Source: Phallusia mammillata
Lineage: Eukaryota
NCBI GenBank assembly: GCA_965637545.1
Contig: OZ281499.1
Coordinates: forward strand, 14,198,001-14,262,000
Direction: 5' to 3'
DNA length: 64,000 nt
Both the position numbers and the translations under genes were made by a program. The notes under the pieces were generated by a model. It was not told the DNA's origin and did no database searches. It saw only the letters and a list, made by a program, of their open reading frames with translations. This document shows positions 17,596 to 18,011 of the stretch, piece by piece. The stretch's first letter is position 1, and each line of letters opens with the position of its first letter.

Positions 17596-17741
17596 AAGCA
17601 AACAGCTCGCAAGTCAACCGGAGGCAAGGCGCCACGTAAGCAACTGGCCACCAAGGCCGCTCGCAAGAGCGCGCCGGCTACCGGGGGCGTGAAGAAGCCC
17701 CATCGGTACAGGCCAGGAACTGTGGCCCTCCGTGAGATCAG
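17596..17741 (+). pseudogene. H3: Histone H3 internal fragment (K4 to about R52), duplicated at 22208-22353
   Basis: [48 protein letters not shown]; matches the downstream copy. Confidence 0.92.
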
Positions 17742-17777
17742 TCTGACAGCAGCAGCAGCAGCCGACGCAGCAGCAAC
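17738..17777 (+). other. Displaced H3 5' UTR beginning at the Inr-like TCAGTC, fused to element C
   Basis: TCAGTCTGACAGCAGCAGCAGCAGCCGACGCAGCAGCAAC matches 4701-4737 apart from one extra GCA unit. Confidence 0.85.
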
Positions 17778-18011
17778 AACTAGGTATCTAGTAGCAGCTA
17801 GGCAAAGCAGTGTTAACTTTGAGGACCACGTTTTGTTTTCGTGGCTGCCTCCTTTTGTTTTACCGCTCTGTTGCGGTTTTGACTCAAGCTAACGGATATA
17901 TATTGTGGATTTACGTGGATTACTGGACTTTTGTGGATTACCAAACTCACACCTAGTCTCAAGGAAACTCTGCTACACCTGTGCTCCTCTCAGGAGGTAT
18001 CCTGAGAGGCC

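What the first reader, a model, noticed from the sequence alone, without database searches (positions are those of the whole stretch)
17596..17800. Element C carries the H3 5' UTR starting exactly at the predicted transcription start: promoter parasitism
Seen: H3 coding sequence stops at GAGATCAG (17741) and continues, through a 5-nt ATCAG overlap, into the H3 5' UTR beginning at the Inr-like TCAGTC about 30 nt below the TATA (4701). It then runs into element C. About 146 bp of H3 coding sequence is duplicated on both sides of C. Inference: a donor copy in an H3 5' UTR was transcribed from the H3 promoter, the full RNA was reverse-transcribed, and the cDNA end annealed by microhomology far downstream of the nick. 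These elements may therefore be expressed by the histone promoters they target.
Basis: partly seen in the sequence, partly recalled or inferred. Interest (0 to 1): 0.76.

Follow-up and report, generated by a model that had tools for sequence, protein, structure and literature searches.

The report
LINE copy carrying a histone H3 leader
A defective jumping gene (LINE) lodged in a sea-squirt histone H3 gene carries the first ~40 bases of the H3 messenger at its own front end, starting at the predicted H3 start site, so its parent copy was most likely transcribed from a histone promoter; no RNA data could be obtained to confirm this.

Summary
H3 codons 4-52 (17596-17741) recur with 146/146 identity at 22208-22353, on both sides of element C. 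At 17737-17741 a 5-nt ATCAG overlap joins the left copy to a 40-nt copy of the H3 5'UTR. That copy matches 38/38 with one extra CAG and begins at the TCAGTC initiator, 33 nt below the TATA box.

New support:
- A sister element, D (4744-6877), sits inside an H3 5'UTR behind an intact promoter, flanked by a 10-bp target duplication. This is the predicted donor arrangement.
- C's leader ends inside that 10-bp site.
- No upstream ATG lies between the H3 start site and ORF1 in C or D.
- No known ribozyme is present that could trim a co-transcript.

Best reading (about 0.7): 5' transduction of the H3 leader by an L1-like, H3-targeting LINE whose donor was transcribed from an H3 promoter.

Still open:
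- The 146-bp repeat may be a long target duplication. It may instead come from a template switch onto a read-through RNA of neighbour B.

The scan found the same phenomenon earlier on other DNA of this genome (s1-399061, s1-368977). This is a new variant of a known strategy (R2 co-transcription, L1/SVA 5' transduction).

The parts
12276..12283 (+). TATA box of the interrupted H3 gene (CCAAT boxes just upstream)
   Evidence: Read directly; 33 nt upstream of the A of TCAGTC, the same spacing as at 4670/4703.
12307..12380 (+). H3 initiator TCAGTC, 48-nt 5'UTR, ATG (12357) and codons 1-8 of the interrupted H3 gene
12381..17597 (+). Element B: 5'-truncated copy of the B/F LINE family with an A18 tail, flanked by AAGCAAACAGCT on both sides
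   Evidence: ORF2 is 98-99% identical to Phallusia mammillata 'Pol-like protein' A0A6F9DMX7.
17596..17741 (+). Left copy of the 146-bp H3 coding repeat (codons 4-52)
   Evidence: 146/146 identical to 22208-22353; tblastn 100%.
17737..17741 (+). ATCAG overlap shared by H3 codons 51-52 and the H3 initiator region: the junction
17738..17777 (+). Fresh H3 5'UTR leader on element C (UTR bases 1-35 counted from the predicted +1 A, with one extra CAG)
   Evidence: 38/38 match to 4701-4737; alignment A1.
17778..17805 (+). 28-nt spacer, unique in the window; its 3' part resembles UTR bases about 28-48 (16/21) and may be an old diverged leader
   Evidence: Unique; local alignment, shuffle P about 0.04. 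Weak.
17806..22205 (+). Element C body and A9 tail (22197-22205). ORF1 18012-19307, RT 19441-20586, zf-RVT 20607-21341. The endonuclease and the first ~460 residues of ORF2 are missing.
   Evidence: Pfam; tblastn against family F; blastn; tail.
22206..22606 (+). Rest of the H3 gene (CC of codon 3 through the stop) with the right copy of the repeat at 22208-22353; a histone 3' stem-loop follows at about 22632
4670..4743 (+). Second H3 promoter: TATA (4670), initiator TCAGTC (4701) and the 5'UTR up to the insertion site of D
4744..6877 (+). Element D: a C-related, ORF1-only element inserted in sense in the H3 5'UTR. Target duplication CAACGAGACA at 4734-4743 and 6878-6887; the rest of the UTR is at 6878-6896. 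This is the donor-type arrangement.

Best explanation
Element C is a defective copy of an L1-like (APE-type) LINE family that targets the first codons of histone H3 in Phallusia mammillata. Its 5' end carries a 5'-transduced H3 mRNA leader.

Proposed sequence of events:
1. The donor copy sat, in sense, about 35-40 nt into an H3 5'UTR, as its relative D does at 4744.
2. RNA polymerase II started at the H3 initiator, so the donor RNA began with the H3 leader. It was not trimmed.
3. ORF2 protein supplied in trans nicked another H3 gene at A|CCAAGCAAACAG (codon 3) and copied the RNA to its very 5' end.
4. The end of the cDNA was joined through 2-5 nt of microhomology (ATCAG).

The acceptor in step 4 was one of two things. 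It could have been the target's own top strand 146 nt downstream, giving a 146-bp target duplication into whose left copy B later inserted. Or it could have been a read-through RNA of a B element lying in another H3 gene, so that B + H3 piece + C went in as one composite with a 14-bp duplication.

Shown: the anatomy, the identities and the order of flanks. Inferred: the start site, transcription from the H3 promoter, and the joining route.
For: - The leader is 38/38 identical to the H3 UTR (plus one extra CAG) and begins within the 5-nt overlap on TCAGTC, 33 nt below TATA at both H3 promoters.
- The repeat is 146/146 identical, whereas the two H4 copies in the window differ at 8/291 positions.
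- C has an A9 tail followed by H3 from codon 3. B has an A18 tail and a 12-bp duplication at nearly the same site.
- C's right flank keeps CCAAG, which is absent to the right of B. So C preceded B, or both entered together.
- D lies in an H3 UTR behind an intact promoter with a 10-bp duplication. C's leader ends at UTR base 35, inside that duplication (bases 32-41).
- The two H3 sites are alike (CAACGAGACAG and CAAGCAAACAG, 8/11) and are nicked within 1 nt of the motif start.
- There is no ATG between the predicted start site and the ORF1 ATG: 345 nt in D (P 0.005) and 272 nt in C (P 0.007).
- No Rfam ribozyme is found in C or in the D/E 5' regions.
- RT, zf-RVT and, in relatives, APE domains are present. 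ORF2 is closest to human L1 ORF2p among solved structures (E 3e-37).
- A 40%-identical LINE abuts H3 codon ~9 in an unrelated ENA contig.
Against: - All 20 runs that hold C are contigs not recorded as RNA.
- The real donor was not found. D is only 77% identical in nt, and no other C copy or ORF1 homologue could be fetched.
- A 146-bp duplication is far longer than the 10-14 bp seen for D, B and the family-A tandem.
- C lacks its endonuclease and has a broken ORF2, so it needs help in trans or was damaged later.
- The array shows DNA-level rearrangements: the H4 3' end is deleted at about 4575, and E has mismatched flanks. Deletions therefore do happen here.
- The 28-nt spacer is unexplained.
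Confidence: 0.7

Rival explanations
1. DNA-level deletion by microhomology-mediated end joining between two neighbouring array units. Unit 1 is an H3 gene carrying B. Unit 2 is an H3 gene in which C sits between UTR base ~35 and codon 3, behind its own promoter. The deletion ran from codon 52 of unit 1 to the initiator of unit 2, and no leader was ever reverse-transcribed.
For: - D shows that promoter-UTR-element arrangements exist.
- Other deletions and rearrangements are visible in this array: the loss of the H4 3' stem-loop at about 4575 and the mismatched flanks of E.
- A 5-nt microhomology fits end joining.
- The model avoids an unusually long target duplication.
Against: - The right breakpoint would have to fall by chance in the 5-nt window at the predicted start site, out of several kb of inter-unit DNA. 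That is of the order of 0.1% (inference).
- The model needs two paralogous H3 copies to be identical over 146 bp, whereas the H4 paralogues here differ by 2.7%.
- It still needs a C insertion with a ~25-bp target deletion.
Confidence: 0.13
2. Chimeric retrocopy. The C RNA had no leader. On reaching its 5' end, RT switched onto an ordinary H3 mRNA in the UTR and copied it to the cap. The leader would then come from a host mRNA, not from a co-transcript.
For: - This also predicts a leader that starts exactly at the mRNA 5' end.
- Template switching by LINE RTs that creates 5' chimeras is established knowledge (U6/L1-type chimeras; my own knowledge, not checked here).
- The 28-nt spacer could be junction filler.
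Against: - The switch point would have to fall, by chance, within the 10-bp site where the sister element D is inserted in the UTR. That is about 2% for a ~500-nt mRNA (inference).
- Co-transcription from that site predicts this end point directly.
Confidence: 0.08
3. Assembly artefact: repeated H3, B/F and UTR sequences were mis-joined.
For: The region is highly repetitive. B and F are 95-100% identical and lie 12.5 kb apart. I could not lay reads.
Against: - The junction has the fine structure of a biological join: microhomology, a tail, and a duplication with exact ends.
- The leader differs from both local UTR copies by one CAG unit, so it is not a copy-paste of a neighbouring stretch.
- 20 runs from 6 studies hold parts of 17598-19300, although which parts is unknown.
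Confidence: 0.04

Closest known systems
R2 (and R1) rDNA-specific LINEs: expression as a co-transcript of the target gene, with upstream 28S sequence kept on the RNA
   Same: Site-specific and in sense in a multicopy gene, with transcription supplied by the target's promoter. In many R2 lineages up to 36 nt of upstream 28S sequence stay on the RNA and are proposed to anneal to the target and prime the second strand. Where none stays, junctions form by chance microhomology (PMC3774820). The flank-dependent transcription argument is summarised in PMC4494074.
   Different: The target here is a protein-coding, Pol II, TATA/Inr histone gene, not Pol I rDNA. The element is APE-type and L1-like, not RLE-type (R2 proteins match far more weakly). 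No ribozyme was detected, so the RNA 5' end would be the cap site itself.
5' transduction by L1 and SVA (e.g. the SVA subfamily carrying MAST2 sequence)
   Same: Host sequence from an upstream promoter's transcript is carried at the element's 5' end inside the target duplication. This shows that the donor was transcribed from a flanking promoter (SVA-MAST2 as cited in PMC4494074; L1 5' transduction from my own knowledge).
   Different: In those cases the flank is an accident of where a donor landed. Here the flank is the element's own preferred target gene, so the arrangement can recur at every generation.
Tx1-clade and other target-specific LINEs of multicopy RNA genes (Keno/U2, Mutsu/5S, Dewa/tRNA; Utopia/U2; NeSL, SLACS and CZAR in spliced-leader genes)
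   Same: L1-superfamily or RLE LINEs with strict insertion sites in tandem multicopy genes, in sense orientation (PMC4494074, PMC4640811). Use of the spliced-leader gene promoter by SLACS is my own recollection and was not verified here.
   Different: All described targets that I could find are RNA genes or microsatellites. I found no description of LINEs targeting histone genes. Tx1-clade membership of these elements was not tested.

Membership tests
APE-type LINE of the L1 superfamily (L1/Tx1-like) | Reverse transcriptase domain with a C-terminal zinc-binding domain | tested here: met
   RVT_1 E 1.7e-35 and zf-RVT E 3.9e-10 in C. The best solved relatives of the family B ORF2 are human L1 ORF2p at E 3e-37, against R2 at 5e-17.
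APE-type LINE of the L1 superfamily (L1/Tx1-like) | N-terminal apurinic-like endonuclease in ORF2 | tested here: not met
   Met in relatives F, E and A (Exo_endo_phos). It is absent from copy C itself: ORF2 residues 1-462 are deleted. C is a defective member, not a different kind.
APE-type LINE of the L1 superfamily (L1/Tx1-like) | Poly-A tail and target-site duplication (target-primed reverse transcription) | tested here: met
   C has an A9 tail, B an A18 tail. Duplications are 10 bp (D), 12 bp (B), and 146 or 14 bp (C or the composite).
Tx1 clade specifically | Phylogenetic placement of the RT with Tx1 reference elements | not tested
No reference Tx1, L1 or R1 sequences were at hand.
5' transduction | Non-element host sequence at the element's 5' end, inside the target duplication | tested here: met
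   The 40-nt H3 UTR copy at 17738-17777 lies between the left repeat and the C body.
5' transduction | The transduced sequence matches the upstream flank of an identifiable donor copy | tested here: inconclusive
   A donor-type arrangement exists (D in an H3 UTR, and the leader ends inside D's 10-bp site). D is not the donor (77% nt identity), and no other C copy could be fetched.
5' transduction | The transduced sequence begins at a transcription start site | tested here: inconclusive
   It begins at a TATA-plus-33 TCAGTC initiator at two promoters.
Target-gene co-transcribed site-specific LINE (R2-like strategy) | Fixed insertion site, in sense, in a multicopy gene | tested here: met
   A is in H4 codon 7, E in the H4 UTR at -14, D in the H3 UTR, and B and C in H3 codons 3-8. 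All are in sense. A relative sits in H3 in another organism.
Target-gene co-transcribed site-specific LINE (R2-like strategy) | Transcripts start at the host gene's promoter and the element has no promoter of its own | not testable with these tools
   This needs CAGE, 5' RACE or reporter assays. The only indirect evidence is the leader on C and the ATG-free path to ORF1.
Target-gene co-transcribed site-specific LINE (R2-like strategy) | 5' self-cleaving ribozyme that releases the element RNA | tested here: not met
   No Rfam family at E up to 1 in 17742-22200 or 4565-7300. An undescribed ribozyme is not excluded.

The most novel reading that the evidence does not exclude
These histone-targeting LINEs have no promoter of their own. 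They are obligate passengers of replication-dependent histone promoters, so their RNA is made in S phase with a histone cap-site leader. The leader then doubles as a homology arm that seals the 5' junction at the next H3 gene. This would be a Pol II, protein-coding-gene counterpart of the R2/28S system. The possible old, diverged leader beneath the fresh one in C would record repeated cycles of this.
Probability: 0.3. Interest if true: 0.8.

Novelty: new variant of a known kind. Interest (0 to 1): 0.6.

Why it matters
Site-specific LINEs are known from rDNA, small RNA genes, telomeres and microsatellites, and their dependence on the target's promoter is best documented for R2. A LINE radiation that lives in the 5' ends of histone genes and rides their Pol II promoters would extend that strategy to protein-coding genes.

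It would tie element expression to S phase, when DNA is being replicated and histone loci are open. It would also give a compact natural example of leader-assisted 5' junction formation.

Copy C is the cleanest record of this. It has a fresh leader, an identical flanking repeat, and a donor-type sister copy 13 kb away. A simple genome-wide census of 5' ends and a 5' RACE experiment would settle the question.

Tried and rejected
No read or contig evidence exists in this report.
- **The look-up of sequencing runs** listed 20 holders in 6 studies. None is on record as RNA and all are contigs, so it says nothing about expression.
- **C ORF1** gave no exact-protein hit and no homologue in the word search, so no other C copies could be fetched.
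- **Relatives of the B ORF2** gave five loci. Only L001 has histone flanks, and its 5' end is cut by the contig end. L002-L005 have no histone flanks. None informs on leaders.
- **P0001** has no contig on record.
- **Earlier findings** looked up by sequence and by several word sets gave nothing beyond the place look-ups.
- **Inverted-repeat and E/F 5' alignments** only located the shared E/F 5' end.
- **Rejected order of events:** B first and then C. C's right flank has CCAAG, which does not exist to the right of B.
- **Rejected donor:** D as the donor of C. It is only 77% identical in nt.

Full report
**Setting**

The first 30 kb of the window is a decayed histone array of the ascidian Phallusia mammillata. 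An ORF2 in the window is 98-99% identical to UniRef A0A6F9DMX7, 'Pol-like protein', of that species.

Histone pieces found:
- H4, partial: 4253-4561
- H4: 11666-11974
- H3 start: 12357-12380
- H3 codons 4-52: 17596-17741
- H3 codon 3 to stop: 22206-22606
- H2A on the minus strand: 23560-23171

Between the histone pieces lie LINEs, all in sense with the histone gene they interrupt:
- Family A ends in H4 codon 7 (4252).
- D (4744-6877) lies in an H3 5'UTR.
- E (6897-11651) ends 14 nt before the H4 ATG.
- B (12381-17597) lies in H3 codon 8.
- C (about 17806-22205) lies at H3 codon 3.
- F (about 23650-30095) lies next to H2A.

The elements encode ORF1 plus an ORF2 with APE, RT and zf-RVT domains. 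Among solved structures, ORF2 is closest to human L1 ORF2p (E 3e-37, against 5e-17 for R2).

- H3 coding sequence ends at GAGATCAG (17734-17741).
- From 17738 the sequence is the H3 5'UTR. It matches 4701-4737 at 38/38 positions with one extra CAG unit, and it carries the C rather than the T found at 12337.
- ATCAG (17737-17741) is common to both partners.
- At both H3 promoters in the window, the A of TCAGTC lies 33 nt below the first T of TATAAAAG, downstream of two CCAAT boxes. This gives a 48-nt UTR. By established knowledge this is a canonical TATA/Inr geometry, with the TCAGT-type initiator starting at A. It remains a prediction.
- The 146 bp at 17596-17741 and at 22208-22353 are identical.

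**Anatomy of the insertion**

C ends in A9 (22197-22205), followed by CCAAGCAAACAGCT..., that is, H3 from the second base of codon 3. B ends in A18 followed by GCAAACAGCT. Its left flank ends ...CCAAGCAAACAGCT (12367-12380), giving a 12-bp duplication.

The CC before AAG exists to the left of B and to the right of C, but not to the right of B. C therefore cannot have inserted into a gene that already held B. Either C came first and B later entered the left copy of the repeat, or both entered together.

C is defective. Compared with family F it lacks ORF2 residues 1-462, including the endonuclease, and the rest of ORF2 is split. It must have been mobilised in trans or damaged afterwards.

**New evidence for a promoter-driven donor**

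1. Element D has an ORF1 72% identical in aa (77% nt) to C's. It sits in an H3 5'UTR directly behind an intact promoter. The UTR runs to 4743, D ends at 6877, and the UTR resumes with the same CAACGAGACA (4734-4743 and 6878-6887) and continues to the base before the ATG.
2. C's leader ends at UTR base 35, counted from the predicted +1. That lies inside D's 10-bp duplication (bases 32-41).
3. The UTR site and the coding site are similar (CAACGAGACAG and CAAGCAAACAG, 8/11), and both are nicked within 1 nt of the motif start. One endonuclease specificity can explain both.
4. From the predicted start to the ORF1 ATG there is no ATG: 345 nt in D (shuffle P 0.005) and 272 nt in C (P 0.007). An H3-initiated RNA would therefore be translated from ORF1.
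5. No known ribozyme, which could remove an upstream leader as in R2, is detected in C or in the D/E 5' regions.

**How the 146-bp repeat arose**

This gave a 146-bp duplication, and B later inserted into the left copy. The perfect identity of the two copies fits. The two H4 copies in the window differ at 8/291 positions, although one of them is a pseudogene.
- *Model 2.* RT reached the 5' end of the C RNA and switched, through the same microhomology, onto a read-through RNA of a B element lying in another H3 gene. It copied H3 codons 52-4, the B tail and part of B, and then joined the target. The composite would have a 14-bp duplication (CCAAGCAAACAGCT at 12367-12380 and 22206-22219). That is in line with the 10-14 bp seen for D, B and the family-A tandem.

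I cannot separate the two models. Both place the 5' end of the C RNA at the H3 initiator.

**Rivals**
- *Deletion between two array units* reproduces the structure. Its right end would have to fall by chance in a 5-nt window at the predicted start site, roughly 0.1% (inference). Deletions do occur in this array: the first H4 has lost about 200 bp including its 3' stem-loop, and E has mismatched flanks. I therefore keep this rival at 0.13.
- *A switch onto an ordinary H3 mRNA* would also give a cap-site start. It does not explain why the leader ends at D's insertion site (0.08).
- *Mis-assembly* cannot be excluded without reads (0.04).

**What is missing**

There is no RNA evidence. The runs that hold C are contigs not recorded as RNA. 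No other C-family copy could be fetched.

**Comparison with what is known**

The strategy resembles R2, which is expressed as a 28S co-transcript. In many R2 lineages upstream 28S bases stay on the RNA and are proposed to guide 5' junction formation; otherwise chance microhomologies are used (PMC3774820). It also resembles 5' transduction, as in the SVA subfamily carrying MAST2 sequence, and flank-dependent transcription as discussed in PMC4494074.

The differences are the target class (Pol II histone genes), the L1-like APE-type element, and the apparent lack of a ribozyme. Six literature searches found no description of histone-gene-targeting LINEs. A 40%-identical LINE abuts H3 codon ~9, followed by H2A, H2B and H4, in an unrelated ENA contig (L001). 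The habit is therefore not confined to this genome.

**Relation to earlier scan notes**

Other agents reported histone leaders on LINE 5' ends elsewhere in this genome (s1-399061, s1-368977). I could not check those loci, and they do not count as independent evidence. They do mean that the scan has seen this phenomenon before on other DNA.

**Verdict**

This is a new variant of a known strategy, with interest 0.6.

Noticed in passing
window 6880-6925 and 11640-11666: Element E has mismatched flanks. Its 5' side is the last base of an H3 5'UTR (6896, where the ATG should follow), and its 3' side is the H4 5'UTR at -14. Its first 24 nt hold H3-leader-like pieces (GACAGCAGC, ATCAG) before the body it shares with F. 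Possible causes are a large target deletion, recombination, or leader-guided joining to the wrong histone gene.
   Followed up: partly
window 4740-4930: Element D begins with two tandem copies of its first ~95 nt (about 87% alike). This is reminiscent of the 5' monomers of some L1 families.
   Followed up: partly
window 6860-6877: D ends in AATAAACAAACAGTA. CAAACAG equals H3 codons 5-7, the other H3 target site. It may be a carried-over target footprint or a 3' sequence that pairs with the nicked target.
   Followed up: no
window 17778-17805: 28-nt spacer between the fresh leader and the C body. Its 3' part aligns to H3 UTR bases ~28-48 (16/21, shuffle P about 0.04) and to the D-locus UTR at about the C/D body divergence. 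It may be an old inherited leader lying under the fresh one.
   Followed up: partly
window 19307-19441: Copy C lacks about 1.4 kb: the endonuclease and the first ~460 residues of ORF2. ORF1 is intact (431 aa) and the flanking repeat is perfectly identical, so this is a recently moved, non-autonomous copy.
   Followed up: yes
window 4561-4600 versus 11975-12190: The first H4 copy, already cut by family A at codon 7, has also lost about 200 bp of 3' flank, including its histone stem-loop and the (GGCTAG)n run present after the second H4.
   Followed up: partly
window 23171-23660 (minus strand): The H2A gene has an in-frame stop at codon 41. Its upstream region is replaced about 90 nt before the ATG by the 5' end of element F, which points the other way. 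No H2B is present in the window.
   Followed up: partly
L001 4400-4600 (ENA ERZ27241785 contig k141_92914): A LINE 40% identical in ORF2 to family B ends against H3 at about codon 9, followed by H2A (minus), H2B and H4. A relative therefore targets the H3 5' coding region in another, unidentified organism.
   Followed up: partly
window 13566-16533 and 25658-29064: Public protein A0A6F9DMX7 (Phallusia mammillata 'Pol-like protein', 1146 aa, intact) is 98-99% identical to B and 95-99% identical to F. An intact ORF2 of this family is on public record.
   Followed up: partly
window 58816-58835: Two family-A copies stand in tandem, separated by a 14-bp H4 footprint (GCGGTAAAGGATTG), about 28 kb from the nearest histone gene. 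The second copy starts GTAGTCAGA, which is initiator-like.
   Followed up: no
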